Positions 30,001 to 49,004 are shown, counted from the stretch's first letter. The stretch is 64,000 nt of DNA from Iphione sp. A-MEVVRFRX5 (GCA_976226885.1 OZ320313.1:46314001-46378000), one strand, 5' to 3'. The notes: a model not told the origin generated them from the sequence alone. Numbers and translations are program-made.

Positions 30001-33000
30001 GGATAGACAGGAGAGCAGCGCCACCTCTTACTAGACCTGCCTACTAACGGCGAACAAAAGGAAGCTTTCTTAATGATGCTTTTCGATCGAGATGGATCTG
30101 CAGTGATTACTGACTACCTCTCTTACAGACTACGACCGCATCCATTGCAAGCAGGACGGTGACCTAGACCTGACGTGCACCGGGGACTATGCTATCCGCA
30201 TCCTCTCGGCTCGGAAGCGGAAGCTACTGTCTGGTTCGTGTACCTCCAGCCAGGGGGACATTTACCAGGCGTGTTACAGCGAGAGCACCGCCTACTCGTC
30301 GGTGACGCGCGCCTGCAACACCAAGACGACATGCCGGACGGACGTCACTGCCATCTTGTCCTACAGCAATGTCGGATGCGAGGGCTACAACGGCGACTAC
30401 ATCCTGCATGTCATCTACAGATGCGAGCCGCGTACGTGTCTCTTAGGAGCTTTTAGCGACGACCAGATTGAGTTTGAATGAGATCCTTTAGTGCTTCCTC
30501 TAATTACGTGTATACTCCTCATCCCTTTCGGCGCATTCCTTTGTTACCTTCCAATAAGCACACCAAGGGACACGAGTGTTTTCCAAGAAACTGCAGAGAC
30601 ATTCTATGCAACGGTCTACTGTACAGAATGTCTATTGGGAAAGTAACAGAACAATCTAAATTAATCGTTCGAGTAACAGAAAGTACAAGCCGTGGGCTAA
30701 ATTCGCATGTATACCAGAAAGAAATATAAACTTCTCCTCTCTGTTCCAGCTTCTTTGCCGGCACACGTTGCGTGGACAAAGTCGATATGCTCGGGTCAAG
30801 CCGACCCCTTACCGTGGGCACACATCCACAGTCTGGTGCCCAACGGTGCCAGTGCCTTTCTCGCCACTACCAGCTGTATGTGCCTCATCGACGTACCTGC
30901 CAACGTCGAGGTACAGGTGAGTGCGACCCTTCCCTCAGACGCCTTTTCTATGGTGATGGCATGTTTCATAGGAACCGCGCCCTCAGTCCACTAAATTACA
31001 AAAAACGTTTCACCAAATAGAACGACTCTTACAGTAACCATACCCGTCGTGTACTAAATTAAAGGAAACGTAACGGCATTAGAAAGATGACTATACGGCA
31101 TCCATACAGCTACAACAACCATGCCAACTTCGCTCACTACATTATACAGTGGAACATCTCAAATACGGACACCTGTTCTGAGCTCAACTGTCCACATTTG
31201 AGACATGGCCACATTAGTGGTCTGCTAGTAGTATAGGATTAGAGTGCCAAATTTGATTTGATTTGAATCCTAAAAGTGCCAAATTTAAGTAATAGTCCTA
31301 AAAAGCCTAAATTGCATTCGTTTTACTGCTTTCTGGCCGAACTTGCATGAATTTCACCATTTTCAGCTGAATGTGCATGAGTTCTGCCATTTTTTTCATC
31401 CCGAATTTAGAAGAATTTCAGTGTTTTTCAGGCAGCTTTTACCTTTTCACGCCCGTGTAAATATGGTGTAGATGATGTGAAAACATAGAAGGAAACATGT
31501 GAAGGAATGTGTGAAGGAACGTGTGAAGACATCTGAAAGACAATGCGAAAACACCTCTGAAGAGCTAGACATTGCTGAAGATGCTCATTGGAAGTGGTTG
31601 CATGTCTCTCTCACACCTCTGAATAGCTTGTCCGCAGGGGACGTCAGGCAAAAATTGCCGTACTGATATGAGGTGTCTTATTATATGGGTTAACTGTGGA
31701 ATACGAATTGTCTGAATTTGAGACATATCCATATTGCAGATGTGTCGAAAAGGGGATGTCCCACTATATTTACTCTAAATGTAACTTACGTCATCTTAAA
31801 AGTTCAGTAATAAGATTATGCAAAAATGCATATAATATAATGCATATATATCCTCTATTTTGAGGTAAAGCCCAGATTCTCAGTGCACCTTTGCAGGTAC
31901 AAAACGTTGTTTTTAATAAAGTTCAAGGTAATGTATCAATTGAAAACTAATCCACAGAATAAAAAAGAATGAACAAGGTGATTGGAACAATCTTTTGGTT
32001 CCCGGCCTATAGACACAATACAGTAATACAGTACAATACAGTAATATAGTGACATTATTTTAATATTATGACATTATGTTAACACCATGGTATTTTTCTA
32101 CCAGAAATATCCATATTGGATAATCTTTCTCTAAAATATCAAAGAGCTAGATTAATCTTAAGTAAAGTTAGTAAAGATACAATGTCTGGTTGGACGGTTA
32201 GATGCCGGGATTTTTCTTAGACTGGGACAAACCCACTCCTAATGTTGCCATTCATAGGCGGGGACGAAAGTACAGAATTTTCAAAATGCGTTAACACATT
32301 CTTGAGAGAATCACACGCGTGCATGTCGCCTCGGTTATCTGGGTTTTTACTGGGAAAACCTTACCATTTACGTTGATTCAGAGGTCCTCACACGTTTTTC
32401 CTTGCATTCCTGTGTAGCCCATATTACTCTCTATGCATGTTACCCATCGATGATAACAAAAGCGTTTTCCTAATAATGTGTATTCCTTTATATATCGAAT
32501 CCAATTGGATTTCTTCGTAAGCAGTGAGTGAGAATATAGAGCTCTGATTTACTTAGGTACATATAGGGCCTATATTTATTCACAATGAATTGAGGGAACG
32601 TGTACTTCGTCCTTTCCAAATGAGTTCGTTGCTCTGAAACAAGAAAATATAAGCCCTCTTTTAATTCAAACGCTTGGGTACAAATAGAATACAATACAAA
32701 CTGCAATATCATCCTCTGCGAAAGGTCTCGTGTTTCGTCTCGGTGCTACTGAGGCAAACCTGATTATTCATTCTTCTGTAACTTTCTCCCTCACTATAAC
32801 TTCGTTGCTCACCACAAACACCTGAAGCCTGGCCAACAGCAACGCAGTGTTCCTTGTTTAGGGGGGTGGGGACGTCAGTCGGGACCAACCTGAGCTGCTC
32901 CCGGGTGGGTGACAGGCGCAGCATTGAAGGCTGAGCTGCTCAAGGCACTGCCGAGCTTGCCGACGACACCTCCTGAAAAGGGCGGAGGAGAAGGGAGGGG

Positions 33001-36000
33001 GAGCTTGTGCAGCCAGGTGGGCAGCCGGCAGGTGGGGGGGGGGGGCGCCCTAGGATGGCGATGGGCGGTTCTCCCCGGGGGTTAGCCCGACCGCCCCTTT
33101 GATTCAACGTCAACGCCGAGCGGACTAAGTCCTACAGCCAGTGGGCGGCGGAGGGCCTGGACGAGGGGGTGGGGGGTGGGGGGCACCAGGAGAGATTTAT
33201 CTTAGTCACCCAAGCTACTCGACCTGCTACAGGCGAGACGACCATATAAGTTTGCGAAATCATGGGACGCAACACACAAATCACTGAAACGAGTTATGAC
33301 GTTTATGGAAAGGGACTTCATTACTTAAAAGGAGAAGCTTTTGGCTGTGTCGATCTAATGGACGGCACATTTAAAAAAATAAATGTTTTTCCTTCAATAT
33401 AATTACAAAAAAGCGACTATCGATCCACCAGCCTTTGTTATACTTTATCCCGAAGCTTATTAGACCGCCATAGAGCGCTAACTTTTAAAGCCGAGTGACA
33501 CGGTCCCATTAACCCCGGGCAGTCTAGATCTGATTTGATGGGCCTTGAATGTCTTAGCAATATATTTAATGAGCATAGCCGATATAGTGCTCGGGTCAGA
33601 CGGGGTAGCAGAAATCCACAGTGTGTGCTACTGGGTGTGCGCCCAAGAGAGCAAAATGTTGAAGAGGCAGTGCGATGGCGTACATCTATAAAGAAAATAA
33701 CATAGCTTGTGTAATACGTCCAAAATTGTTCCAGTGGTGCTACATCTAGAATGACATTCTACGTGCAGTATGGCAACACGTTTAAATACCAATCGCCCCC
33801 CCCGTCTAATATTTTGCTGTACATGTATATCCTATCCACTCATCCAATCTGGATCTTATGGGCTTATATACTCAGAAACAACGAACCTAAGGTTCTGGAA
33901 AGTCCAGAAACATTTTCCTACTACGGACTCTTAATTGGCACTGAGTGATTTTGAAGATGATAAGTAAAGAGACTTTTTTTATCTACCGTGTGACCCTATT
34001 AACTGTAGAATTAATCGGGGTGGCTTGTTCTGATGAACAAGTTTTACACTTTCTGGTATCCACATACTGAAAATGACAGACTCAAAAGGACCGCACGCTT
34101 TACGCTGATTGGTTTCGTTTAGAGGTTTGGCCTCTGCCTTACTTTAATCCAAATGTTGAAGTAGGATCCATGCACTCCACTTTTGGGGTAACATCACTTG
34201 TATATTAAGCATATATACGAATACACGGCGGGTGTACATGTATGTATATAACATTGGCATAGTAGTTGACGCTGGCTTTCGCTATAATGTATCGGGTTTG
34301 ATTTTTTACTGAGGATATCCACACAATATTCAATCTACATTGTATATCTCTGTAGCTAGCCTCTGGCGTCTCCAGAGAGGACAACGTTCTGTATTATACC
34401 TATACTTCTGGTGATGGCGACGTGGCTTATATAGACGGTGTATGTTATATTCTGCAACAACAGATCCAGCCACAAACGTTCAGCCTCACCAAGTACGGCA
34501 CGTGGTGCGGCCAGAAGATTGTGCTGCGTGACGGCGCCGACTCACGCGAGTTCTGCAGTCAGCTGTACGACCCGTTTATCCTGAGGTGCGCGCCCCAAGC
34601 ACGCACGTTGGAGCTGAGCTTCGTTAACAACGACGCCAGTATCCTCACACACTTCAACATAAGTATCTGGGGTGAGTAGACAGTGCTGCTGTAAAAGCTG
34701 GGGCAGCCCTGGCAGGGACAGCCTCAGTGAGAATGACATGTCACTGCATATATCAAGATCAGGCCTTTCGTGTGGAAGTCGTTCTCCTTTCTTCGCCGAC
34801 TTCTTAAAGGTCGGTTCCGTGATATCTCGTATGTTGATCCACATCGCCTAATTAGAGATTCGCCTTCTTACTTCAGCCACTACGGGGGATCAGCTCATGT
34901 TCTGGTGCGGTTTACCGCCGACAACTAGTACGACAGCCTCAACCGTCACCTCGTCAACACAAACCAGGAGCACCAGTACAACATCTATGTCGTCTACTAC
35001 GACCACTGCCCCGACTACCAAACCAACACCAACCACCACAGCCTCAACACTGCCGACCACTACGACGACAAGTACCGTGCCCACCACAAGCTCGACGATA
35101 TCCCAAACTGTGACTACGAGAACAAGTACGCTGCAAACCGTTCCATCCTCCACAAATTCCTCTCCGACCGGCAGCGAGGCACCCCTCATGACACCCCCGG
35201 TCTTGAACGTCCCATCCAACGAGCCCCCAGGCGATACGGATACTTCCACCACCGTTAAGACGACGGCTACGATGCCGCCCTTGCCGCCACTACACGCCGC
35301 CTCCACGACGTCGACGACAGCACCGGACGTAGAGACTCAGCCGACGGCGATGATGCCGGTCTCGGTCTCCTCCAGTAAGGATCCGCGCGACAGCAATGTC
35401 CTGGAACCGGCAGCGGGCGACCCGAAGGACCAAGGAAGCCAGGAGCCGTCCTTCACTGCCTCCCGGATCCCCGACGGTGAGCGTGTCCAATCGTCCACTT
35501 AGCTTAGCGCGAACCTTTAGCGAGAACCTTTAAAAGTGATTCCTCGCCAGCTGTGAGCCTTTAAGGCAGAGGGTCGTGGGAGGGTAAGCCTTTGAAACTA
35601 TTCTCTGCCGACTGCTTCCGGCGTGCCATGAATCATTCTAATTCCATTTGGAATCGAACGACTGGGTTCCTGTCCCACACTGAACTACTTCCACTTTGGC
35701 TTTTTATTGTCTGATTTATATGACATGGAAGGATACTCAATTAATGCGAATAGAAACGTTGTAGACGCTACAGTATAGATTATTAAATACATGTACATGT
35801 ACACAGATATATTAAGTTTGTGTATAAGTGCCTTTATATCTACTGCTGTTTGTCACAATATAAAGGGCTCTGGTGTTTGAGCATATACATGTATATAGCG
35901 AATATAAAAAGGATACGTAATATGTCACTGTAAGGAGGTTACATGTGAGAAGGAGTAGGCTCTCACAGAAGAAAAGAATTTAAGAAGTTCTCTTCAAAAA

Positions 36001-39000
36001 AATGGATAGAAACTACTATAGCCAATCAGCCATTAACCCTGTCTCAGACACAGCAACAAACCTCCCACTGCTAGCGGACAACACTGCAGATAGGGTTTAC
36101 GTGTTATGCCAGCAGCCTGCATACTGCTTAAAATTAGACCAAATTTGTCAATAGTTCTTACATGACTACGTTAGCTAATTAAGGGGTGAAATTTCAAAGA
36201 ACAGCTACAACACGAGCAGACACGGACTGATTTAGGGAGAAGGGTTGCTTTGTTTGAAACGCTCATAACTGCCGAGTGGTGCCAAAGCTAATAATAAAAA
36301 GGAGGACACGTTCTCCTTTTCAGCCGAGCATTAGAGATCTTTCAAACACATTCCCAAGAACATTACCTCCTTCTCAGAATCTTATCTGGAGGAGGCCTAC
36401 TCCTCGCGGAAAACGACAAGTGTAAAAGGAGGAGACAGCAGGGATGCGGCACATCGGTAGCTAAGACCTTTACCTGCATAAAACCCTTAGCCATGAGTAT
36501 CTCGTGTGATAATGCAGACGGCCTTCTTATGAGAGGCCATGTAGAGGCGAAGCAGCGACCCTGTCCAGGCACAAACGCCCCTTGTCATCAGAGCGGCTGC
36601 AGTCGATGCTCGTCCGTCTAATGGCACCGTATCCTTCACAGCAGCCCACTGTCTAGCAGTGCTTGCCCCTCCAAATCAAATGCCCGTAAGACATAGCGAC
36701 TGTGCCATACGAAGGAAGCAGCACAATATTAATAGCAAAGGCCATGTTATATGGTACCCGTGTGAACAAAACACGCACAGAGCTACCTTCATAAATACCT
36801 ACTATATCAAGAACTGAATAAACATGAATGCTTAATTTAAGGCACGCCCCTAGTTGAAATCTAGCCTCCAACATTAACGACAACACCATCTCCAACCTTT
36901 AGTTGGAGAGAGGGCAAAAGTTAAGCTGCCTCATCACCTGGACTTATAAATGGTGCAGAGATACTAACTTCTGAAGTTATGCATCTATAATTAAATGCCT
37001 CAATTTATTAAATGAATCCAATGTGCATTTAAAATTGACCCACGACACAACGGTCCATTACGGAAACGGTCCTTTTTCTTTATGTCCTTAAATATGGCAG
37101 TGAAATATAACCATAATAATTGGAGACGATAGGTGAAAGATGAAGCATACTATGGTGCGGTGCACAAAGACGGTCCCACACAGACAACGACGCTGGGCAG
37201 GACGCTCTTAGATGCCTGTGCCTTTACTGACTGGTGTGATCCGTCATACTTCCCTTGCATGTCACTGCCAACGAGCTTTTCCCATCGTTGCGCCGCTGCT
37301 CAAGACCAAGAGACGTGGGAGCGAAAAATTGAAGTAATATGGAGAAAAATGCCGTATTATGTTTTCCTTTCCGCACACCGTCTACTATTTTCACACGCTG
37401 TACTTATTTTTGGCTGTGCCTCAATGCCCTTCCTTTATTGCATCTTACAAATGGATGGACATGAAAATGAGGCCGCAAATTTAAGAGCTCCATAAGCAGG
37501 AAAATGACGGTACGGCGCCGCTCCGGATCTTGAAATAATGACCCAACAGGTGGGGGTGGTGCCTCCTAAAGGAGAAGATATACTTTTGAATGCAGCATGA
37601 TGACGCCCAGCTCCTGATAAGCACATACGAGTAATTGCCGCTAACACGACAGCAGTTAGGTGTCAGTAATGTTCGTCGGGAAAACAACCTTATATGTATA
37701 TATCGTTTTTAATCTTCCATTTCTTAGAGATTACCAAGCGGTGGTAATTATTTTCGCATTTAATATCATTCCATCTCGTCTTGCGTCTTCTAGATGGTAT
37801 AATTTAAGAGAAAATATCATAGTTTTATCATAGTGGCACAAAGTGAAAAATGTTGCTCCTTCAAGTACATCACTATTTTATGAGTAACTACACAAAAAGT
37901 GGAAAATAGTTAATATCAATATCATGAACACTGTTTTCGCGCCGGGGATTTATCTGCGACGAGCAGAGTTGATGGTTTATCATACTAAGCTGTTCTGTTC
38001 TGCTTTTGTTTCCAGTTCTCATCATCGGTGCCGTCGTAGGTGGTCTCATCTTCGTGATTCTCGTAGTCACTGGGGCAGCGTTCTTCTGTGCCAGGTAGGA
38101 CCAAAAGGATTTAAAACCCAACACATTGATAGGAAAATCATCAACAGAATATTTTTTTTCAAGTCTATTTTAAAATGGGGAATGTGTCAGACCATAAACG
38201 TTGAAGCCTTTCATGAACCGTGTCCATGTATCTTATGCAAGCACTGAGGGGGATGTTACATTGATTAAGTCAACACAACGGGACTATCACCTTCCTTTGA
38301 CTATACTGTCCAACAGCTCATATATTCACTCTTAAGTGGTTCTTAGCATCATAAATAGTTTATGCCTTAATGTAAACGGACTCATTGGTAATTCAACCCA
38401 GTAAAACGCGTCGTTCTACATCATTCTTCGTCGGGCTTTACAACGTAACCCCTTCTTTTGTCGTATGAAACAACATCAAAATGTGAAAGGAAGAATGTGC
38501 CAGGAAGCCTAGAGAAAGCCTCTGCTGGTCCGACTTCCCTTTGCCTGACGGCCCGCTATGGTCTTAGCGAAATGGCTTGCGCTTGTTTTTTTCTCTCTCC
38601 CATCCTCTTCCTAACGAAAGAATGACATTGCCTCGATCGCTGCTGCAATAGAACGGCCGTACCCATGGTCTATAGCGCCGCCGATAGCCTCGTTAATGAG
38701 GGAAGCTTACCCGCCCGGCCACTTGCGCCCGAGGAACAAGGCCACGTCGACTGACTATCTCACATCAAAGGGTCAATCTAGCACGAGCGGTTCGGGGCGG
38801 CGCTTGCCGCTCTCAACAGCCCGATAAGCGTGGCCGCCGGTTGACCGCTCCTGTTGGCGCATGGTTGGCATCGCCTCGGCTCACACGGAGATTACCTTTC
38901 CCTGACTTCAGCTCACGCCTACGTGCCTACACGGCTGGAAGTACATGCGCACTGTGGGACATACATCGGGCGAGGGAACATTGGATCTCGGCCGTCACCA

Positions 39001-42000
39001 GTCTTGATCTCTAGCAGCGTGCTGGTAAAACCACGCAAGTAGGGTGTATTGAAACGGCAGCAAATTACACAGATGCGAACAGCAACACAAGAGAACACAC
39101 CGAACGAGGGAAACGCTTTCAATTTCTCCTCTGCTTCCTATTTTATCACGCGATATGAAAGCGCGGGTATCCATTTTCTGACCACACCGACCGAGTATGT
39201 AACCGCATCTACATCGGGCGAAATCGAATTCAGATCGTGTTAACTAAGGGCTGATCCTTCTTTCACCTGACATATGAAAGCAGCAGGGACTTTTCAGGTG
39301 GAGCCAGGTGGGGCCGAGCCACAACTGGTCGCTTGACATTAATCTAAAACGCATGCTAGCGCCTTAACTGTTGGCTATACCGGGCACGACCAGACAAGTC
39401 AGCAGATCTTATCAGGCGATATGTCAAGAGACAGACCGGCATATAGCCAAGTCAGACACGCCCTGCAGTGTCCCTGGGCGACACTCAGGTGGTAGGGAAG
39501 TCTAACATCAACTGCTGCGCAGGGCTACACCGTGTGTTCCATGTGAAACCCTTCCAGGTGTTTTTGACTCAGTATCCGCCTTGCCAGATCTCTAAACGCC
39601 TCGAGTACAAAATGACGACAATCAGCACCAATGCTACACCCACAACCACCACTAAACCGCGACGACCATCACAGTCGCAATGTACAGAACGGTGAAGAAT
39701 ACTGCGGCTCATACCAACCAATGTGCTGTCCCCGTCGCCTACCTCGGCGCCCCTTCGGCTATCCACTTTCCCAGCTTTCATTTATCCCCATCCTCATCAT
39801 GTTCTCAACTCGACGCGTCTTCATTATTGAACAAGACCTGTCTGGTGTCACCTCAACCCTCACTGCATATTTATTTCAGTTCGACGGCCCTTCCGTTCCG
39901 CTGCTTCATCTGCTCGCCCATTCATTTTCTTTGCGAATCGTACCACTCACGCTACAACTTAGGAAACGTGATTTAAGTTACTCACCGGCTTACTTGTTTT
40001 AAAAAAATGACGACATAGTGTTTTAGTCGGTCTGGCCAGTATTTTACCACACACTAGACTGACTATATATGTACATGTACGTGTATGTATTGGTGCGCTT
40101 CGTGGCTTACACGAAAACTGTACCTAATGTTAAATGTACAAATAAGCGACGAGTTTGCCTTTCCTGATCCAATCAGAACAGGACTGCAGCTGCCGTCTGT
40201 CTAATATTCCCTGGCAGCATTAATTCAATGAAAATTTAAACCGCATAAGTTTGATCTTGTCTCACGACGATTAAAAACAAGACCACGGTACCAGGGACAT
40301 ACATATTAACCGCACGCCACAATATGGCGGCCCAATGGCCTGGGTAATTTTAATCAGGGGAACGAATATATGCATCGGACCTTCTCAGTTCTTCTTTCGT
40401 TACTGCCCCATGGGTCTCACGACGCGGAACGGCCCCTTCTTGTCGTGCAAATCCACCGGGGACGACTGACTTAGAGGGATGCGCAGCTTGATACGATAGA
40501 CGGGCAATGATCGCCACCATCCCCAACTGCCTGCGTTCCTTTTTAATGCGGATCGCATGTTCGCCTCGCGACGCGCACTGGCGAGGGGGGAGGGGACCAT
40601 TCTGATAAATTGTTATTTAGCTCGTTTTACAACGACATCATCTTGAAAGATCCAGGCTGCTGCCGCTGCTACTGCTACTACTGTTGTCTGCTGCTGCTAG
40701 GATGCTACCAAAGGCGCTATTTCCCACACTGGTCCCATTTTGATGCTGCCACAATCGCTGTAAACACTGATATTACAGTGGCTGGCCGTCAGCCTCCGAC
40801 CACTCGTCTCTCACTTACTTAGGTGCACTGCGGCTAGTAACAAGATCCTAATGTGGTTGTCAGGGATACCAGAATTAAGGGTTGGTTGCGAGCACACCTG
40901 TAATGACTTCCATCTACACCTGCGCCCGTTATATATCACAACCTTCCGCGCACTGCCGGTCTAAACTGCTACGCTGCAGTGATGCATACAAACAATCATG
41001 AGCTCGGTTCTGACATTAACCACAGGCGTCGCTTGTGTCCGTATATAAGTAGTATGGTCCGCGCGATAATCGCTGTGGCGTAGCTGTTTCGAAATGACAT
41101 CTACGCCATTAGCAGGCCTCTAAGCACTATTGTCGCTTTAATCATGTTACTCTACTTCTTGTATATAGGCCGTCTTCCAGAAATTACGACTGCTTTCAAT
41201 TGAACGGGAAGACACAGCATGCGAGGCGGTTACACTGCTTACCCCGGCAAATGAATGTATGAGGTAGAGGACGTCTCGATTTATAGTTCTGTCATTTCTC
41301 ACGCTGAATGTGCCATCTGCCGCGGCCACGACCTGCATCAAGTAAACGACGAAATATACAATTAGCCGACGTTATGTATGGAGATATATCTTACGGAGGG
41401 GTGCACCCCCACATAACCTTGTTTGTACACGCTTGCCTTTTGGAACCTTATAAAAGGTTGGCAGGGTCGGTAATATACGTTTGGCAATAGCTCTCCAGCC
41501 GTATGCCAAGATCTGGGAATCTTTATGCATGTGCTATTCATTTTTTATACGGATTGCCTCTGAGTAGGATCACTATTCTCTACATGACAAGTCCCCCACC
41601 GCCTCTTCCCGACACACCCAATCCCCAGCACAGGTCACTCCCTGGAGAGCAATACATCGCAGACCGGATACAATTTCCACCATGTGGGACATTATAGGTC
41701 CATACAATCAGCACAATGCAGGACAGCAATACACGGGAGCTACATTTCATCTGACTCGGCGTGGATGCTGGTTATTGCTGAGGAGCGTTTACAGGCGCTG
41801 TCTACGCGGTGTTGTTACGGTTGTGGGTGCGTGGGTGGGGTGCGGAGGGCCTCTCGCTGCCCTGATCGGGACTGTCCTCAGCCGGGATGGATGGCAGGGT
41901 TGATGGAAGGGCAGGATGGTGGTCGCCCAAGGAGAGGCAGGTGGAGACTGCGTTGACAGGTCGGTCGACCAAATCAGGTGGCTGAGACTTCAATGCAGAT

Positions 42001-45000
42001 GATCTATACAGCAGGGAAGGCGCGTGTGTGTTTGGGGGGCGAGTGGGTGTAAGACGCCCGTATGGATTATTAACACTACGAGGTGAGGCCGAGGCACGTG
42101 ACTGAGCTGCTCCCAGCGGTAGATAGCCAGCCGTGCCGTCGTTGCCCACCACCCCCAGAACATGATGACAACTCCTCCTTCTGTGTCACCCGGGAGTCGG
42201 TCGAGCAGGTTCTCAGGAGAAATCAAGCGACTGACGCCTTGCCACGTGTTAGGTGAGCAGTCGGTGGCCTCCTACCCTTCCGCGTGCCACCAATACCGCA
42301 GTAGTGAACCCCTATACCACCATCGACAGCAAGTGCGATCACAGATACGGACCGGCCATCACTCCAACATAAAAACAAAAAAAAGAATACCCATAAAGTG
42401 TTTTCGTGGATTTCCAGTAGGAACAGCAATGTCGGTGTGTCAGAGCTGTGGACGGTTCTAAAACACGCAATGCATACGTGTGCCTGCCAAAAAGGCTCCG
42501 ACTTAAGGACCTGATAAAAAATTACCACATGGGAATCTTTCTATTCCGGAACAAAGGACCATGCATTGACATACAGTATGGAGATACATCGGTCCAAAAA
42601 GCGAATTAGGTTACAAAAAAAAGCACACCAGAATAACATGACAGGCAGAAATACTTACCCACAAAAAGGTGGCAGGTTGTTAGATCGGACTAGGTATAGG
42701 CCCCGCTAAAACACGCCGCGTTCTGTCTCACGTGCAACGTGACCTGCGTGTCCTGTGACAGGGCAGCCCGCCATGGCATGTCCCTTGATCCGACGGGGCG
42801 TGGGAGGGAGGGGGGGAAGAGCTGCTGAAAGATGGCTCAGTGCTGGCGGGAATGTGGAGCAGGGTGCATGGGTGGGCGGGTGCATGGCTGCTGATCCTGT
42901 ACACGACATCCTCCACCTCTTCCTGGCGACAAGACCAATGCGCCCCCCCCCCCCAACATCCCACCGTCAGGAACACCCAGGCTTCTGAATCCAGCGGGGA
43001 AAAAAATTTCAAGATTGAGTCTTGACTGCCATTCCCGTCTCGCTCTCTGTGTGTAACTCCCACTGTGGCCCAATCTCTTATTCTCTCGCCCGCCTTCGAT
43101 CCATCTCTTGCCGTCCGTTTTTCTCTGCTACTCTCTCCGTGATTAGCGATGCTTTGTGAAAGCTAATTATCAGAGCCCGAGAGGAGTCTGATGCGGCGCT
43201 GGCGGTGGAAGAAGAGCTTTAAAACGTCTCGGCGCCACGCCCTGAATAAAACACGGACCGACGCGGAAACCCGAAGAGGCGCAAAATGGCATCGCTCTAT
43301 TCAGACGAATCCCACGACTTTCTAGGATGGTCTCCTAATGCAGGCTCATTAGTGCTCGTGATTCATGCCTGAGATCGGAGCCTAAGTGGCCGCTACGGAA
43401 ATCTGCCCCGGGATTCAGTGACTCGCGTGAAAATAATCGTTTAATTAAGTTCTTTATACGTGCAAATGATAGGCCTGTTTGTATTGATAAACAAACACAG
43501 TCGAATGGGGAAAAAAATTCTATCGCGGCAAATCCGGCTCCCAAAATAAAAGAGGAACAACACTATTTAGAACCCGAGCAACATTGAGAACTTTGGGCCG
43601 AGGCTGCCATTTAAAACGAGAAGTACCACTGGTCTTTCTAACTTGTCTAATCGGACATATGTATCATGTTTAGATGCAAACGGCATACCAACATCTGGCA
43701 CAAGTGGGACACTAACTGTGAATGGTGCTTTCAGTTTTTTTTTTCAAGATGTAGTGAATCTATATCCTCACTTGAATATCACAGTCATAACATATTTTAA
43801 GCGTGATTTATTGAGACCGAATGGCCAACTCGGTTGGCCTTCGTGATTAGCCATGTCTGCTAGCGTTAGCCTGAGGTCCAAAACGTTGGAAAATTACCCC
43901 AGTGGGCTTAATAAGCTTCACTTCGGGTATTGTGCGCATGTACGGTCGCAGGTGAACAAGGTCCAGGTCAATCAAGGATTGCAATTTGCAGCCGCTATCA
44001 GGTGACCATTATACCGACCTAGGGCGCTTGACATCCACAGCGACCACTAAATCGGCACAGCGTGAGAGGCAACCACGCCTTCCTTATAGAGAAACTCTCA
44101 TTCAATGCTGTCTGCCATGGGCTCATCGGTCAGTCGCGGCAGCGCAGGAAACCCTCGGCTAAGAGAAAAGTAGGAGGCAGAGCAGTGGCTCGTGGGTTGG
44201 GCGAATGGACTCGGAGAGATCCTATTGAAATATTGCCCGATTCTTTAATCTGACATGCCATTGAGGAGGGTAATGTGATGGCATTAGGATGGGCAAGCGT
44301 CGCACCCAGCAAAACGAAAGCGAGCGGCACCGCACTGTAAACCATAGCGCCGCGTAGGGGCCGAGGTGGTATAGTTGGCAGGACGGGCCTTCTCCACTGG
44401 GGATACTCGTTCTGCTGATGTATCTATTATACCTCAGACTGGACGGTGGCGGCTAAAGCTACAGCAGCAGCTGGTTCCACGGTAGCAGCAGAAGCCCTGA
44501 CGAGCAGAGCTGTAGGAACAATGTAGCCGTCCCTTCCTTACGCCGAACAACGCTTCCTGTGAGCAATACAAGTCAAACACTGTGTCCGAGATTTACACGT
44601 CCTTATAACGGGAGCGTATTAATCTGGGCGTCACCTAACGTCGTCAACGCGTCCTTCCATTGCTTCAACCCCCTGCGGCTAGCGGTAATAATCTCACTTT
44701 CCCACCCGCTGTGAATTATCTATAGACACGTCGCAGAGGATACTAAATTAAAGAAAATAAAATAAAAAGAGAGAGAGTGGCAATCAGGAGATGCGTTTCT
44801 TAGACACCGATAGCTCAAGAGCCCATCAACACAACCACTGTTTTGGCGCTGCTATGCCGTCCACTTGTGGAAATTTGTTCTGATAGTAATCAGTAAGCCA
44901 GTGCTTTAACAAATGTGGCTAAGAATATCTCCGGAGACAATAAGTGTATGGGGACATTGATCAAACAACGGATGGGAGAAGGAGAAGAAAAAAGCATGTG

Positions 45001-48000
45001 ATCAACCCAAAGAGAGGGGGGAAAACGAAAACGAAAAAAGGTTGATCTTCGCATTAGCAAAACGTCAGCCGCCAAAATATGATGGCGCATACGTAGTCAG
45101 CTTTTACATGTGTATATCGTCAGCCCCGGAGGCCTGCAGCATATTTACAGGCAGTATGACAAAAGGACGAGGGGTCCATGACAAGCCACAGTGGGAGCAC
45201 ATGAATGGCGTCCTATTGGAGATAAGCCCTCAGAATATATCAGCGCTGACGTCGCTTACAAGGCTAGCGCCAATGAAATGGTGTGGTGCCGGTGACCCAG
45301 GAGCTCCCGCTTTTGTGAACGACCACTGCAGTGTACATGCATACAGCAGCGGCCCCAAAACAACTACGTTTTAACGGACTGCTCTCCTCTAAGCTTTTCC
45401 GGAATGGCACACACAAGTATATGGAGCTGTAATCCATTTAGATGCTTTGTGTGTTGTGTATAGGTCGATCTGATCAGCCTTGCCAGCGTCATCTATCAGA
45501 TTCACTCTATGCATATTGACAGTGTCTCACAGGTGGTTCTTCATGTAAGGAATCTATCATTAAACGACGACTTCTAAACATGCATATTATAACACAGTGC
45601 GAGATAGACCCATATACACATCACAAACACGAGAAAGTTATAGATGGCGTAGCTCTTGATATACTGACCATATGTTTCATATCTTAACGAGACAGTGTAC
45701 AGATGGTAATGAACGCTGACGAGTTTAGATGGGTTCATATACATATTTCTCCCTCCTGAATATCGTTGGGCTGCGGGGAAAGGTTACCAGGGTAGCTACG
45801 CACTACCTGTGTATATGCAAATTTGAAGTTGGCGGCTAAGTCACTTTAAGAAGATGCAGACGGTCCATAAGCCAATCAGTCAATGGCCGATCGGTGATGA
45901 ATGTAACGTCAACTTGTCATTGCTCATCGGGGGCCTCTACTCCTCCTGACTCTCAGGCGGAGTCTCTGGAGGAGATCCACCGAGGAAGGACAAGATATGG
46001 CATCTACCTAGTGCCTATCTGTGAGGCGTGCACTAATCCCATTGTTCGTATATGATCCCTTAGCCCGCCACTCAACGTCAGCTGGTCGTCCTCCACAATC
46101 AACGTGAAGACGCGCGCCGAATTCAACGCGTCATGTATCGGCACGAAAAGGACAATCTGCACAAAGCATAATTATGAAAACGTCAGCAGTGAAGACGCCC
46201 GCCGCGAACAAACACACCGATGATTACAGAGCCGAACTGAATTCTAATTTCGCAGGATCTAATTTGGATGTAGCGGATTCTCAACGCTGTTACGCAGCAG
46301 AAAGAAGATATTCCCATGCTGCCGTCTCGAAAGACTGAGACGTTTTGTTGAAAAGCACTAAGATGAGAGGAAGCGATTAAGCACGGAAGGGCAGAAAGTT
46401 ACTTGAATTATTAAGGTTCTCTCTCTCTGAAGATGAAACAGGGACTGTTTGCTTCCTGTGTCTTTCCAACACCGCTTGTTCGTACGCTACACGAGTAAGC
46501 AAATAGCTCTGACATGCCTGATGTAAGATACAGATTGAAAATTGCGTGAGATTATGATCTGGTGTAGAAGCAATTGCATTTCTCCCTGGTAAAGAACTAA
46601 TTATGAATAAACCAAAGCTCAGTAACTGTTACTAATGTACTAAAGCTCAGATTGCTTATCTCATTTTACATCTCTCACTCTCCAAACTTTGCCACGCTTA
46701 ATTTTCACTATATATACACATATAGGAATACGGATAAAGAAGTAAATTCCATTGCTATATGAATAACACATTTATGTAGTATAAATACTAATACCCTGGA
46801 CGAATGACGCTACTTATTGCTATACACAAGCCAAACTACTGATACTTAGTCACCGAGAAGGAGAAACACGAAGCGATTTGTCACTTGTGTGTCTGGCATA
46901 GCTCCCAGTGGGTAGTACGATACAAAAACTACAACGATCTCAAAAGTAATAAGTCGGATGTTGACAAATCGGCTCGTGTAGGTCTCACAGCTTTTTAACC
47001 GCAGAGCATCTTTTTTGTACTAACTACACCCAGACAACCTTTCAGACGGCGAAAGGCTGCGGCTGCTGCTGCTGCAGCCTCCCTGCCCATGGGCGGACCA
47101 CACACCTACGAGTCTACCGTCCACAAGCTGCCCCCGCCGCCACCAGGTGGCAATCCGTACGCCTTCCCCCGCTACGGACCTTACGGACCAGTCGACCCGA
47201 ACGGAAGTGACGACAACATCTACTGTGAAATCCCAGCCGATCACGAGCCGGAGCCTTCGCCTCATATGTACAGACACCACTACAACCAGAACCACTACAA
47301 CCAACCCCACCTTCACAACCATCACCACCACCACCACCACCATCACCACCAACAACAGCACCACACCCCTTATCGAGCACTTCGATTGTGATTATTGCCA
47401 ACCATCCTAAGAATAAATGAAGCCCCTGCCCAGAAAGGGGAAAAAATTAACTACTTTGAGGACCATGAACGTGAACCAAATCCACCCCCAAACAAATTGC
47501 ATGATAACCCTTTAACAAAGGACTGTGGAAGGCACTGCATTAGGTACATTGAAAGATCGCTATCGTCTGATTATCGACACTATGAGAGTAAGTTGACAGT
47601 CGATTTTTTTCTGCCCAAAGTAGTGATTAGAGAAGATGGTTGGCAATGTTGTTTTGCACGCTTTAAACACCTGTTTAGTTGCACACGTCATCCACTTTAT
47701 GCGTACCCCGCAAACCGTGTTGTCATGAACTGAATGTGCATGTTAGTTTTTCATTCAATATGCCCATCTTATTAGGAAACGACGAATCAGATTGCTTTGT
47801 TCTTTTCATCCGAGTAGCGAACACACAGGGCAAGTTCACGCCCATCTCAGTTACCTGTGGTGGATAGCTCCATATCACACATTGGGAGAGCGAAGAAAAC
47901 CACTTCTCTTACTGCTGGATCACAGCACAAAGGACCAAGGTCAGAGTGGTGTCGATATTCTCGATTCCCTTCATTGACCCATTCTGAAGTTCTCGACCGT

Positions 48001-49004
48001 GTCACGAGAGTGGAGTTGCTTACTTTCGGCACACGCCCAAAGCGAGGGTTATGGTCGTCTAGAGAAGGGAAAGTACCGTTTCCTTTTATAAGAGCAGACA
48101 TTACGACGCTGTCCCTTAAGAAAACAGTTCATTTTTCGCCCTCATTGTACTACATCGAGTAGGTCCTGCGTTCACGATCCCAGTAGACTCCACCACGGCT
48201 AGGTTTTATTTTGATGTTGTATCTTCAAGCGAGGCGTCTTCGCTTTTATGTGTACTCCGCCTGTTTACTGGCATTCGTTATCGTGAAGATGTGCCGATGT
48301 CTCCTTCAGTACCTATGCTTTGGTACTTACCAGTATCTGCTGCTCCTTAAGTGTGATTCGGCGTGTTTTGCCACAAACTGTTTGTTCTATATTGATTTTC
48401 GACACACAGAGACGTTTTCAATAATGTCTTCCATTGCATACTATTTGAGTAAGTCTAATAACCACACTGTAAAATAAAAAAAACAGAAGGTTGTGTTCCA
48501 TGCTTTCAATGTACGAATACAATTCTCACATAAATGTCCACACTATGTCCATAACTATGATTTAGCAAAGCGTATTGTTACTCGTGTGTAATTAATCCGA
48601 AGCCAAACAGTGATAAAATCCCAGTTGATTGAACAGTGGCGCCAGAGATTAATCAGTGCGGAGGGCGGATGGTCGAGTCGGGGCTGTTAGCTGACTATTT
48701 AATAACACTGCTGCTTTCCCATCTTGATATTTGCAGAAGGAAGTCCAAGCCAGACGCCAGCAGCTATCCCACCGACACTATGTCCGAGGACCATATCTAC
48801 GAGGAGCCTACCTACTACACCATGCCCTACGACCCAGAGCCGGCGACGCTGGGGCCGCGGACAGACACTAGGAGGGGCCCAATGACGGTGGGAGATCGCA
48901 GTGCTCCGAGTTACGGTCCGCAACCGGTGGCGGTGGCCGTCATAGACGATGTGGCTCACAATCCCCTCTACCGCGGGGAGCATAACATGCTCTTCGCCTA
49001 CTAA
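23877..49004 (+). CDS. Gene B: multi-exon type I membrane protein paralogous to gene A (SP - SUEL-like - CUB-like - 200-aa Thr-rich stalk - TM - alternative tails), about 620 aa (tail 1) or 590 aa (tail 2)
   Basis: Exons 23877-24024, [25029-25040], 30129-30431, 30750-30916, 34464-34671, 34877-35476, 38016-38094, then 47034-47391 or 48737-49004, all join in frame with GT-AG sites. Linking the tails across about 9-10.6 kb is inferred from phase and polybasic starts. Confidence 0.75.
25029..25040 (+). CDS. Gene B 12-nt microexon (GNVT)
   Basis: Branch point TACTAAC at 24972-24978, long pyrimidine tract ending cttcag|, exon gaaatgttacag, donor AG|GTGAGA; frame-preserving phase 1-1. Confidence 0.6.
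30129..30431 (+). CDS. Gene B exon: SUEL/Gal_Lectin-like domain
   Basis: 303-nt phase 1-1 exon (cttacag| ... |gtacgt) encoding DYDRIHCKQDGDLDLTCTGDYAIRILSAR...GSC...QAC...RACNTKTTCRTDV...VGCEGYNGDYILHVIYRCEP, 8 Cys. This frame is not in the ORF track. Confidence 0.85.
30750..30916 (+). CDS. Gene B exon: CUB-like domain, N-terminal half
   Basis: ctctgttccag| ... cag|gtgagt, phase 1-0; ICSG...AHIHSLVP...TTSCMCLIDVPANVEVQ. Confidence 0.85.
31147..31766. mobile_element. pogo/Tigger-type MITE in a gene B intron
   Basis: TA|CAGTGGAACATC...GATGTCCCACTA|TA (imperfect TIR, TA flanks). The right subterminal sequence resembles the right end of the 54969-56774 element. Internal GTGTGAAGGAA repeats near 31500. 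Confidence 0.65.
34464..34671 (+). CDS. Gene B exon: CUB-like domain, C-terminal half
   Basis: caacag| ... g|gtgagt, phase 0-1; WCGQKIVLRDGADSREFC...LRC...TLELSFVNND...FNISIW aligns with the gene A exon at 3147-3336. Confidence 0.85.
34877..35476 (+). CDS. Gene B exon: CGLP motif plus Thr/Ser/Pro-rich mucin-like stalk (600 nt)
   Basis: cttacttcag| ... g|gtgagc, phase 1-1; covers ORF 34897-35502 (FWCGLPPTTSTTASTVTSST...). Confidence 0.85.
38016..38094 (+). CDS. Gene B exon: transmembrane helix
   Basis: 79-nt phase 1-2 exon VLIIGAVVGGLIFVILVVTGAAFFCA; acceptor ctgcttttgtttccag|, donor ag|gtagga; same length and phases as the gene A TM exon. Confidence 0.85.
47034..47391 (+). CDS. Gene B alternative terminal exon 1: Tyr/Pro/His-rich cytoplasmic tail
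   Basis: TACTAAC branch point then acacccag|, phase-2 entry: RQPFRRRKAAAAAAASLPMGGPHTYESTVHKLPPPPPGGNPYAF...DDNIYCEI...H10...TPYRALRL*. AATAAA follows 21 nt after the stop. Confidence 0.7.
47412..47417 (+). promoter_or_regulatory. Candidate polyadenylation signal for tail-1 isoform
   Basis: AATAAA just downstream of the stop at 47391. Confidence 0.45.
48737..49004 (+). CDS. Gene B alternative terminal exon 2: Tyr-motif cytoplasmic tail
   Basis: ctttcccatcttgatatttgcag| phase-2 entry: RRKSKPDASSYPTDTMSEDHIYEEPTYYTMPYDPEP...DDVAHNPLYRGEHNMLFAY*. Confidence 0.7.

What the first reader, a model, noticed from the sequence alone, without database searches (positions are those of the whole stretch)
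38016..49004. One ectodomain, two swappable signalling tails: alternative last exons with different tyrosine motifs
Seen: after the phase-2 TM exon come two stop-containing phase-2 exons, each starting with a juxtamembrane basic patch (RQPFRRRK; RRKSK), which is expected only directly after a TM helix. Tail 1 has TYESTV, PPPPP, GNPYAF and DDNIYCEI, with AATAAA right after the stop. Tail 2 has EDHIYEEP, YYTMPYDP and HNPLY. Established: (I/L)YxEI resembles Src-family substrate and SH2 sites, YxxP binds Crk/Nck/Abl-type SH2 domains, NPxY binds PTB domains and drives endocytosis, and poly-Pro binds SH3/WW/EVH1 domains. Inference: alternative polyadenylation or last-exon choice rewires the receptor's intracellular output.
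Basis: partly seen in the sequence, partly recalled or inferred. Interest (0 to 1): 0.75.

Follow-up and report, generated by a model that had tools for sequence, protein, structure and literature searches.

The report
Lectin receptor with two alternative tails
An invertebrate cell-surface lectin receptor gene ends in two separate stop-containing exons that encode unrelated tyrosine-rich tails; both are conserved in a distant relative, so the gene probably makes two tail versions by a familiar mechanism, though no RNA data could be obtained.

Summary
A 79-nt transmembrane (TM) exon (38016-38094) ends two bases into a codon. Two stop-containing exons follow, at about 47.0 kb and 48.7 kb. Both start at AG acceptors in the matching phase, and all quoted motifs are present.

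The main new evidence is a related locus in a very diverged genome (ENA ERZ25767047). It has the same order: CUB-like exon, mucin exon, 79-nt TM exon, tail 1, tail 2.
- Both tails keep the same acceptor phase and stop position.
- Non-synonymous/synonymous differences per site are 0.19/0.67 for tail 1 and 0.31/about 1.0 (saturated) for tail 2.
- Seven tyrosines are conserved in each tail, while the introns cannot be aligned.
- Neither species has another TM-like exon between the TM exon and the tails.
- Of five upstream donors checked, only the TM donor has the right phase.

Tail 1 also has a conserved 14-nt motif and AATAAA just after its stop.

Corrections: the conserved tail 1 acceptor is 47045|47046, not 47033|47034. 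"GNPYAF" is not NPxY. The Branchiostoma attribution is unverified, and other follow-ups on this genome point to an annelid.

No RNA run or annotated protein could be found, so the splice junctions remain unobserved. This is a new member of a known kind (compare RET9/51 and CD46 CYT-1/2). The scan noted related receptors with unrelated tails elsewhere in this genome (s1-325156), but no two-tail gene.

The parts
30129..30431 (+). SUEL-like lectin exon (enters and leaves in phase 1), with 8 cysteines
   Evidence: Pfam PF02140 covers model positions 1-80 of 80, at E 7.6e-4, 20.2 bits, below the 31.4-bit gathering score. Splice sites were read. In the ESM Atlas search, 28 of 40 nearest clusters are SUEL_Lectin, score 0.95.
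30750..30916 (+). Inferred exon for the first half of a CUB-like domain (phase 1 in, phase 0 out)
   Evidence: Acceptor ttccag| and donor cag|gtgagt, with phases matching both neighbouring exons. This is inference only. It was not tested by conservation, because the related locus fetched did not reach this far upstream.
34464..34671 (+). Exon for the second half of the CUB-like domain (phase 0 in, phase 1 out)
   Evidence: Splice sites read. It is 77% identical in protein to merged locus 3436-3642 of ENA ERZ25767047 and 79% to P0002 from a metagenome scaffold. Pfam gives no hit to this exon alone.
34877..35476 (+). Thr/Ser/Pro-rich mucin-like stalk exon (phase 1 in, phase 1 out)
   Evidence: Sequence and splice sites read. 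A counterpart Thr-rich exon, beginning ATTGEPLDFQCGILP, lies at the same relative place in the other species.
38016..38094 (+). 79-nt TM exon ending AG|gt (phase 1 in, phase 2 out); the only upstream donor in the phase both tails need
   Evidence: Kyte-Doolittle hydropathy over a 19-residue window is 3.0, and it is the only strong TM-like stretch on the + strand between 35.5 and 49.1 kb. The counterpart at L004:4551-4629 is also 79 nt with identical phases. Paralogue gene 1 has a 79-nt TM exon with the same phases.
44226..44288 (.). Conserved non-coding element of about 64 nt inside the TM-to-tail 1 intron
   Evidence: It is 87% identical to the other species and lies in the same intron there. 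It is the only alignable intronic DNA. All three + frames contain stops. It is unique in the window, with no Rfam or tRNA hit. Function is unknown; a role in last-exon choice is speculation.
47046..47391 (+). Tail 1 coding part of the proximal terminal exon (an alternative in-frame acceptor lies at 47034); 114-118 aa
   Evidence: The counterpart is L001:10117-10408, about 74% identical in protein, pN 0.19 against pS 0.67, with 7 conserved tyrosines. AlphaFold2 predicts no fold: pTM 0.12, mean pLDDT 51. The His/Gln-rich stretch (about 47283-47370) is absent from the relative.
47392..47417 (+). Tail 1 3'UTR: conserved 14-mer TTATTGCCAACCAT followed by AATAAA
   Evidence: The 14-nt exact match lies just after the stop in both species; 0 of 300 shuffles reach it. 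AATAAA is at 47412. In the other species AATATAAA follows the 14-mer.
48737..49004 (+). Tail 2 coding part of the distal terminal exon; 88 aa; 3' end not defined
   Evidence: The counterpart is L001:15096-15357, 55% identical in protein, pN 0.31 against saturated pS, with 7 of 8 tyrosines, the NPLY motif and the C-terminal FAY-stop conserved. AlphaFold2 predicts no fold: pTM 0.11. The first poly(A)-like hexamer is ATTAAA at 49140.

Best explanation
This is one gene for a single-pass surface receptor: SUEL-like lectin domain, CUB-like domain, mucin-like stalk and TM helix. It ends in two alternative 3'-terminal exons.

The TM exon's donor (38094|38095) would splice to one of two acceptors:
- The proximal acceptor (47045|47046, or possibly 47033|47034). 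The mRNA would then be cleaved at the AATAAA 21 nt after the stop, giving tail 1.
- The distal acceptor (48736|48737), skipping tail 1 and giving tail 2.

The tails are unrelated in sequence. Both are predicted to be disordered, and both begin with a basic stop-transfer patch.

Each tail carries its own conserved set of short motifs:
- Tail 1: K[LV]PPPPP, YA[FV]P, RYGPYGPV, [IV]YCEIP.
- Tail 2: IYEEP, YYTMP (both YxxM and YxxP), NPLY, and FAY at the C-terminus.

The two isoforms would therefore bind the same extracellular ligand but recruit different cytoplasmic partners or follow different trafficking routes.

Shown: the exons, their phases, the conservation of both tails and of the exon order, and the lack of any other TM exon. 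Inferred: that both junctions are used, that the choice is regulated, that the tyrosines are phosphorylated, and which adaptors bind.
For: - Exons, phases, stops and motifs are present as described.
- A related locus in a deeply diverged genome has the same order. It runs CUB-like exon, mucin exon, 79-nt TM exon, a 25.2-kb intron holding the same 64-nt conserved element, tail 1, 4.7 kb, tail 2.
- Both tails are conserved as protein while synonymous sites are saturated. pN/pS is 0.19/0.67 for tail 1 and 0.31/1.04 for tail 2, against 0.18/0.87 for the CUB-like exon. Mismatch by codon position shows the coding pattern in the proposed frame.
- Both acceptors need two bases from upstream in both species.
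- Of the five upstream donors examined, only the TM donor leaves two bases.
- A six-frame comparison of window 28-64 kb with the 55-kb related locus finds only the CUB-like exon, the TM exon, the 64-nt element, tail 1 and tail 2 (the low-complexity filter masked the mucin exon).
- No other TM-like exon lies between the TM exon and the tails in either species.
- Tail 1 behaves as a true terminal exon: a conserved 14-mer plus a poly(A) hexamer directly after the stop.
- Tail 1 contains no conserved, in-phase donor.
- Seven tyrosines per tail and the listed motifs are invariant.
- AlphaFold2 finds no fold in either tail.
Against: - No RNA evidence of any kind.
- No annotated or transcript-derived protein with either junction exists in the searched collections.
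- Only two genomes could be compared.
- The distal poly(A) site is undefined.
- Donor-like sites occur after the tail 1 stop, though only at about twice the sparse rate seen in the large TM-tail 1 intron, so a cassette-exon mechanism is not excluded.
- The motifs are 4-7 residues long and degenerate.
- The shallow two-sequence alignments weaken the disorder call.
- Phase compatibility is a family property, because paralogue gene 1 shares it. On its own it does not tie tail 2 to this gene.
Confidence: 0.68

Rival explanations
1. CD46-like cassette mechanism. Tail 1 is not a terminal exon but a stop-containing internal exon. When included it is spliced on to the tail 2 exon, which then serves as 3'UTR. 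When skipped, tail 2 is translated. Two protein tails still result, but by exon skipping rather than by alternative polyadenylation.
For: Donor-like sites exist downstream of the tail 1 stop, for example AGA|GTAAGT with the exon ending at 47587. Human CD46 makes CYT-1 and CYT-2 by alternative splicing of exon 13 (PMC5064401).
Against: - These donor-like sites are few, at about twice the sparse rate of the large TM-tail 1 intron, and are not conserved.
- AATAAA lies 21 nt after the stop, next to a conserved 14-mer.
- A stop about 200 nt before an exon junction would normally trigger nonsense-mediated decay (established knowledge).
Confidence: 0.1
2. Only one tail belongs to this receptor. The other, more likely tail 2, is the last exon of a different transcript that starts from an unrecognised promoter or small coding exon in the 38-48.7 kb interval or further upstream.
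For: No junction has been observed. Small first exons would escape both the conservation scan and the hydropathy scan.
Against: - Nothing else between the TM exon and tail 2 is conserved as coding sequence.
- Intron ORFs have no significant Pfam match; the only hit was a sub-threshold one (E 0.035) to the antisense ORF over the 64-nt element.
- Tail 2 has no conserved internal ATG.
- Tail 2 begins with a conserved basic patch ([RV]KSK), as expected directly after a TM helix.
- Its order and spacing relative to the receptor gene are kept in the second genome.
Confidence: 0.08
3. Tail 2 is the decaying last exon of a lost downstream tandem paralogue, or a chance ORF, and is not used.
For: The family is tandemly expanded, and all members examined share the 79-nt TM exon and the phase of the last exon (note s1-325156). 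A leftover exon would therefore look phase-compatible.
Against: An 84-codon frame with the same stop position, 55% protein identity, 7 of 8 tyrosines conserved and a 0.35/0.29/0.79 mismatch pattern by codon position survives where the flanking DNA cannot be aligned.
Confidence: 0.02

Closest known systems
CD46 (membrane cofactor protein) CYT-1/CYT-2 isoforms
   Same: A single-pass receptor in which alternative splicing gives two cytoplasmic tails (CYT-1 and CYT-2) on one ectodomain (PMC5064401). The Ser/Thr/Pro-rich stalk before its TM helix and the distinct signalling of the two tails are from my own knowledge.
   Different: CD46 switches tails by alternative splicing of exon 13 (PMC5064401). 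Here the proximal exon has its own poly(A) signal right after the stop. The ectodomains are unrelated (sushi repeats from my own knowledge, against SUEL-like plus CUB-like), and the tails here are 5-7 times longer.
RET9/RET51
   Same: Alternative 3' splicing gives one receptor two different C-terminal tails, which change trafficking and downstream signalling (PMC3459860).
   Different: RET is a receptor tyrosine kinase, and the variable part follows a shared kinase domain. Here the entire cytoplasmic region is swapped and no catalytic domain is present.
DCBLD1/DCBLD2 scaffolding receptors
   Same: Single-pass receptors containing a CUB domain. Their intracellular domains carry YxxP motifs that are phosphorylated by Fyn and Abl and recruit CRKL (PMC6029619). 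Tail 2 has IYEEP and YTMP, and tail 1 has YA[FV]P.
   Different: No LCCL or discoidin domain was seen here. There are only 1-2 YxxP motifs per tail, no sequence similarity was detected, and DCBLD proteins are not known to me to swap whole tails.
SUEL/rhamnose-binding-lectin single-pass proteins (C. elegans EVA-1, vertebrate EVA1C; from my own knowledge)
   Same: An N-terminal SUEL-type lectin domain on a single-pass membrane protein.
   Different: Those proteins have two SUEL domains and no CUB-like domain or mucin stalk. Relationship was not tested here. The SUEL match here is below Pfam's threshold, and the sugar-binding motifs appear diverged.

Membership tests
Genes with alternative last exons encoding different receptor tails | Two or more terminal coding exons, each with its own stop, downstream of a shared donor in a compatible phase | tested here: met
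   Both tails need two bases from upstream, and only the TM donor supplies two. The arrangement is the same in the second genome.
Genes with alternative last exons encoding different receptor tails | Each terminal exon has its own cleavage/polyadenylation signal | tested here: inconclusive
   Proximal exon: AATAAA at 47412 plus a conserved 14-mer. Distal exon: only ATTAAA at 49140 and later hexamers, none conserved.
Genes with alternative last exons encoding different receptor tails | Both splice junctions observed in RNA | not testable with these tools
   No sequencing run was listed for this DNA, so read laying could not be used. No transcript-derived protein was found.
Genes with alternative last exons encoding different receptor tails | Both alternative exons maintained by selection | tested here: met
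   pN/pS is 0.19/0.67 for tail 1 and 0.31/1.04 for tail 2. The stops are kept and the introns cannot be aligned.
SUEL/rhamnose-binding lectin domain (Pfam PF02140) | Match at or above the Pfam gathering score | tested here: not met
   20.2 bits against a cut-off of 31.4 (E 7.6e-4, full model length). The paralogue scores 22.3 bits.
SUEL/rhamnose-binding lectin domain (Pfam PF02140) | Eight-cysteine framework and overall domain features | tested here: inconclusive
   Eight Cys are present at SUEL-like spacing (read by eye). 28 of 40 nearest Atlas clusters are SUEL_Lectin at score 0.95. The YGR and DPC sugar-binding motifs are not recognisable. No structure was predicted.
CUB domain | Pfam CUB match | tested here: not met
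   No Pfam hit to the second-half exon alone. The spliced domain could not be submitted by reference, so 'CUB-like' rests on the pattern read by eye.
ITIM/ITSM immunoreceptor tails | [SIVL]xYxx[IVL] or TxYxx[VI] | tested here: not met
   A regex scan of both tails in both species finds neither. YCEI has Asn at position -2.
DCBLD-type scaffolding receptors | CUB + LCCL + discoidin ectodomain and a cluster of YxxP sites | tested here: not met
   No LCCL or discoidin exon was detected. There are 1-2 conserved YxxP per tail.

The most novel reading that the evidence does not exclude
In this expanded lectin-receptor family, the 79-nt TM exon with its fixed exit phase acts as a universal adaptor. 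Whole signalling tails would then be single-exon modules that tandem paralogues can capture from each other. This gene would be an anciently fixed case that kept two unrelated modules under regulated last-exon choice, perhaps controlled through the 64-nt conserved intronic element. That would be a plug-and-play route for diversifying receptor output in an invertebrate recognition-receptor family.
Probability: 0.15. Interest if true: 0.55.

Novelty: new member of a known kind. Interest (0 to 1): 0.35.

Why it matters
If both isoforms are made, one extracellular lectin-type sensor would be coupled to two different intracellular programmes. Tail 2 suggests endocytic/PTB and PI3K/Crk-type motifs. 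Tail 1 suggests SH3/EVH1-type proline-rich and Src-type motifs.

The arrangement has been kept since before synonymous sites saturated between the two genomes. That makes it a clean natural experiment on how invertebrate recognition receptors without a catalytic domain choose their outputs. It also gives a defined pair of peptides for adaptor pull-downs.

The mechanism itself, alternative terminal exons giving alternative tails, is textbook. The value is in annotation and in characterising an undescribed receptor family, not in a new principle.

Tried and rejected
- **RNA evidence.** The look-up of sequencing runs listed no run for the tails (kind rna, 46900-49100) or for the constitutive CUB-like and mucin exons (kind any, 34464-35478). 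Read laying therefore could not be used.
- **Annotated isoforms.** The word search found nothing for tail 2. For tail 1 and for its alignment it found only P0001, a bacterial-style ORF call on a eukaryotic contig. The exhaustive representative search with the CUB-like exon found only P0002, a 120-aa ORF from a 1.4-kb metagenome scaffold, plus chance repeats.
- **More species.** Two scans of JGI metagenome contigs with the tail alignments found no relative.
- **Are the two tails duplicates?** hhalign gives probability 0.2% between the tails, and the same between tail 1 and the paralogue's tail. Rejected.
- **A second TM exon or nested gene in 38-48.7 kb.** Hydropathy and exon-like scans, the conservation scan and Pfam on intron ORFs found no TM exon or gene (Pfam gave only one sub-threshold hit, E 0.035, to an antisense ORF). 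A TM-like stretch on the minus strand at 39602-39658 is the antisense of a Thr-codon run and is not conserved.
- **A composite tail 1 to tail 2 mRNA through an in-frame donor.** No conserved candidate was found.
- **The 64-nt conserved element as tRNA, known RNA family or coding exon.** No tRNA or Rfam hit. All + frames contain stops, and no conserved stable hairpin was found.
- **Suspected transposase ORFs at 55.4-56.1 kb (minus strand).** No Pfam hit, so this is not claimed.
- **Literature.** No paper on this receptor family or locus was found.
- **Not attempted.** Searches with a spliced full-length protein were not possible, because no reference exists for a spliced sequence and long sequences were not typed.
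Full report
**What is in the sequence**

The TM exon is exactly as described. It spans 38016-38094 between ttccag| and |gtagg, is 79 nt long, and encodes a 25-residue hydrophobic stretch. It ends with two bases (AG) of a split codon.

From 47034 the matching frame reads R-QPFRRRK, a poly-Ala run, then HTYESTV, KLPPPPP, GNPYAF, RYGPYGPVDP and DDNIYCEIP. A His/Gln-rich stretch follows, then TGA at 47389-47391. AATAAA lies at 47412.

From 48737 the frame reads R-RKSK, then EDHIYEEPTYYTMPYDPEP, HNPLY and LFAY, ending at TAA 49002-49004.

Open frames of about 90-120 codons are frequent in this window. ORF length and an AG in the right phase are therefore not significant on their own.

**The gene upstream**

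On the same strand I could define four exons with consistent splice sites and phases:
- A SUEL-like lectin exon at 30129-30431. The Pfam PF02140 match covers the full model length but is below threshold (E 7.6e-4). The nearest Atlas clusters are SUEL_Lectin.
- An inferred exon for the first half of a CUB-like domain at 30750-30916.
- An exon for the second half of the CUB-like domain at 34464-34671.
- A Thr/Ser/Pro-rich stalk exon at 34877-35476.

Their exit phases are 1, 0, 1 and 1. Only the TM exon exits in phase 2, which is what both tails require.

A second, compact paralogue lies at 1-5.3 kb. It has a TM exon of the same 79 nt and the same phases (4627-4705) and a single tail exon (5128-5302). 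The phase scheme is thus a family trait.

**Comparative evidence (the main new result)**

The word search with tail 1 returned one ORF, P0001, from a 3.6-Mb contig of ENA assembly ERZ25767047. I walked along that contig with five overlapping loci covering 55 kb. It has the same layout:

| Feature | Position in merged locus | Notes |
|---|---|---|
| Second-half CUB-like exon | 3436-3642 | 77% protein identity |
| Thr-rich stalk exon | about 6660-7235 | |
| TM exon | 12952-13030 (L004:4551-4629) | 79 nt, tttcag|CC...AG|gtacgt, identical phases |
| Intron | 25.2 kb | |
| Tail 1 | L001:10117-10408 | |
| Spacer | 4.7 kb | |
| Tail 2 | L001:15096-15357 | |

I compared window 28-64 kb in six frames with this 55 kb. 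The only matches were the CUB-like exon, the TM exon, a 64-nt intronic element, tail 1 and tail 2 (the low-complexity filter masked the mucin exon). Introns and flanks cannot be aligned.

**Selection on both tails**

Synonymous sites are saturated, while non-synonymous differences stay low:

| Exon | pN | pS | Mismatch at codon positions 1/2/3 |
|---|---|---|---|
| Tail 1 | 0.19 | 0.67 | 0.23 / 0.16 / 0.53 |
| Tail 2 | 0.31 | 1.04 | 0.35 / 0.29 / 0.79 |
| CUB-like exon | 0.18 | 0.87 | 0.22 / 0.17 / 0.57 |
| TM exon | 0.24 | 0.94 | 0.36 / 0.12 / 0.84 |

Other conserved features:
- Both acceptors are tttcag|G in the other species and need two upstream bases, as here.
- Stop positions are kept: tail 2 ends FAY-stop in both species, and tail 1 ends Y-x-A-L-x-x-stop in both.
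- Seven tyrosines per tail are invariant.
- Both tails begin with a conserved basic patch: R-RRK for tail 1 and R-[RV]KSK for tail 2.

Both exons are therefore translated sequence in both lineages, not relics.

1. Both are in frame. The other species has no AG at the upstream position. Tail 1 most likely starts R-RRKAAAA.
2. GNPYAF is not an NPxY motif. The conserved reading is YA[FV]P.
3. Conserved motif matches are as follows. No ITIM or ITSM pattern is present.
   - Tail 1: K[LV]PPPPP (SH3 class I pattern), YA[FV]P, YGPV, YCEI and Y[RQ]AL.
   - Tail 2: YEEP and YTMP (YxxP), YYTM (YxxM), NPLY (NPxY) and C-terminal FAY.
4. The His/Gln run of tail 1 is a lineage-specific insertion.
5. Branchiostoma could not be confirmed. 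Follow-ups of other windows of this genome concluded annelid, and the top Atlas cluster for the lectin exon is commonest in Annelida (weak evidence).

**Is either tail owned by something else?**

The evidence says no:
- Between the TM exon and tail 2 there is no other TM-like exon on the + strand in either species.
- No other conserved coding piece lies there.
- The intron ORFs have no significant Pfam domain; one antisense ORF gave a sub-threshold hit at E 0.035.
- No tRNA or Rfam family is present.
- Tail 2 has no conserved internal start codon.
- Tails 1 and 2 are not detectably related to each other or to the paralogue's tail.

**How the switch probably works**

Tail 1 looks like a genuine terminal exon. 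A 14-nt motif (TTATTGCCAACCAT) sits just after the stop in both species (0 of 300 shuffles reach this length). A poly(A) hexamer follows it: AATAAA here and AATATAAA there.

No conserved in-phase donor lies inside tail 1. Donor-like sites after its stop are few, occur at about twice the sparse rate of the large TM-tail 1 intron, and are not conserved.

The simplest model is competition. Either the TM donor splices to the proximal exon and the transcript is cleaved at its poly(A) site, or transcription continues and the donor splices to the distal exon. A CD46-type cassette mechanism remains possible.

The 64-nt conserved intronic element (44226-44288) is the only conserved non-coding DNA in the locus. 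It is a candidate regulator, but nothing ties it to the choice between exons.

AlphaFold2 finds no fold in either tail: pTM 0.11-0.12 and essentially no secondary structure. By the Uversky hydropathy-versus-net-charge criterion, composition places three of the four sequences on the disordered side. This fits tails that act through short linear motifs, although the alignments have only two rows.

**What could not be done**

- No public run was listed for this DNA, so no junction, 3' end or expression level could be examined.
- Neither protein collection holds an annotated or spliced product of this gene.
- JGI metagenome scans added no third species.
- Full-length spliced proteins could not be submitted, because they have no reference.

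**Comparison with known systems**

Swapping a receptor's cytoplasmic tail through alternative 3' exons is well known. Examples are RET9/RET51 (PMC3459860) and CD46 CYT-1/CYT-2 (PMC5064401). From my own knowledge, the leptin and prolactin receptor isoforms are further cases.

YxxP-rich, kinase-less, CUB-containing scaffold receptors are known from DCBLD1/2 (PMC6029619), but this gene is not a member of that family.

The SUEL-like/CUB-like/mucin receptor family appears undescribed. The scan notes that it is expanded in this genome and that its members have unrelated tails. That makes capture of a neighbouring paralogue's tail exon a plausible origin, though this was not tested.

**Verdict**

The feature is real, and it is very probably a two-tail receptor gene. 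It is a new member of a known kind, and its use in RNA still has to be shown.

Noticed in passing
window 44226-44288 (counterpart at record position about 1054951 of ENA ERZ25767047 ctg39040, inside L002/L001): A sharply bounded element of about 64 nt is 87% identical between the two genomes, inside an intron that otherwise cannot be aligned. It has stops in all + frames, no Rfam or tRNA hit, and is unique in the window. A 7-bp inverted repeat (ATGCCAT/ATGGCAT) flanks a variable loop.
   Followed up: partly
window 47392-47405: The 14-nt motif TTATTGCCAACCAT lies directly after the tail 1 stop and is conserved exactly in the other genome (0 of 300 shuffles reach this length). It may be a 3'UTR regulatory or poly(A)-upstream element.
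   Followed up: partly
window 47283-47370: A His/Gln-rich run in tail 1 (ten consecutive His, then QQQ) is absent from the related genome. It is a lineage-specific codon-repeat expansion inside an otherwise constrained tail.
   Followed up: partly
window 1-5302: A compact paralogue with a SUEL-like exon (within 1194-1688), a CUB-like exon (within 3147-3413), a mucin stalk (3553-3879), a 79-nt TM exon (4627-4705) in the same phases, and a single tail exon (5128-5302). The tail carries NYAF and RDIYLD. Its lectin domain is only 24% identical to that of the two-tail gene.
   Followed up: partly
window 47033|47034 and 47045|47046: Two in-frame AG acceptors lie 12 nt apart at the start of tail 1. 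Only the downstream one is conserved. Use of both would add or remove QPFR next to the membrane.
   Followed up: partly
Follow-ups on other windows of the same genome report annelid affinities, and the nearest Atlas cluster for the lectin exon is commonest in Annelida. The taxon was not established here.
   Followed up: no
L003 (ENA ERZ23495071, 1375-bp metagenome scaffold): A metagenome scaffold carries a CUB-like exon 79% identical to the window's and 85% identical to the ERZ25767047 copy. This is probably DNA from a third related animal in an environmental sample.
   Followed up: no
window 39602-39658, minus strand: A strongly hydrophobic 19-residue stretch (hydropathy 2.98) followed by RR lies on the antisense strand of a Thr-codon run in the large intron. 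It is not conserved and is probably a compositional artefact.
   Followed up: partly
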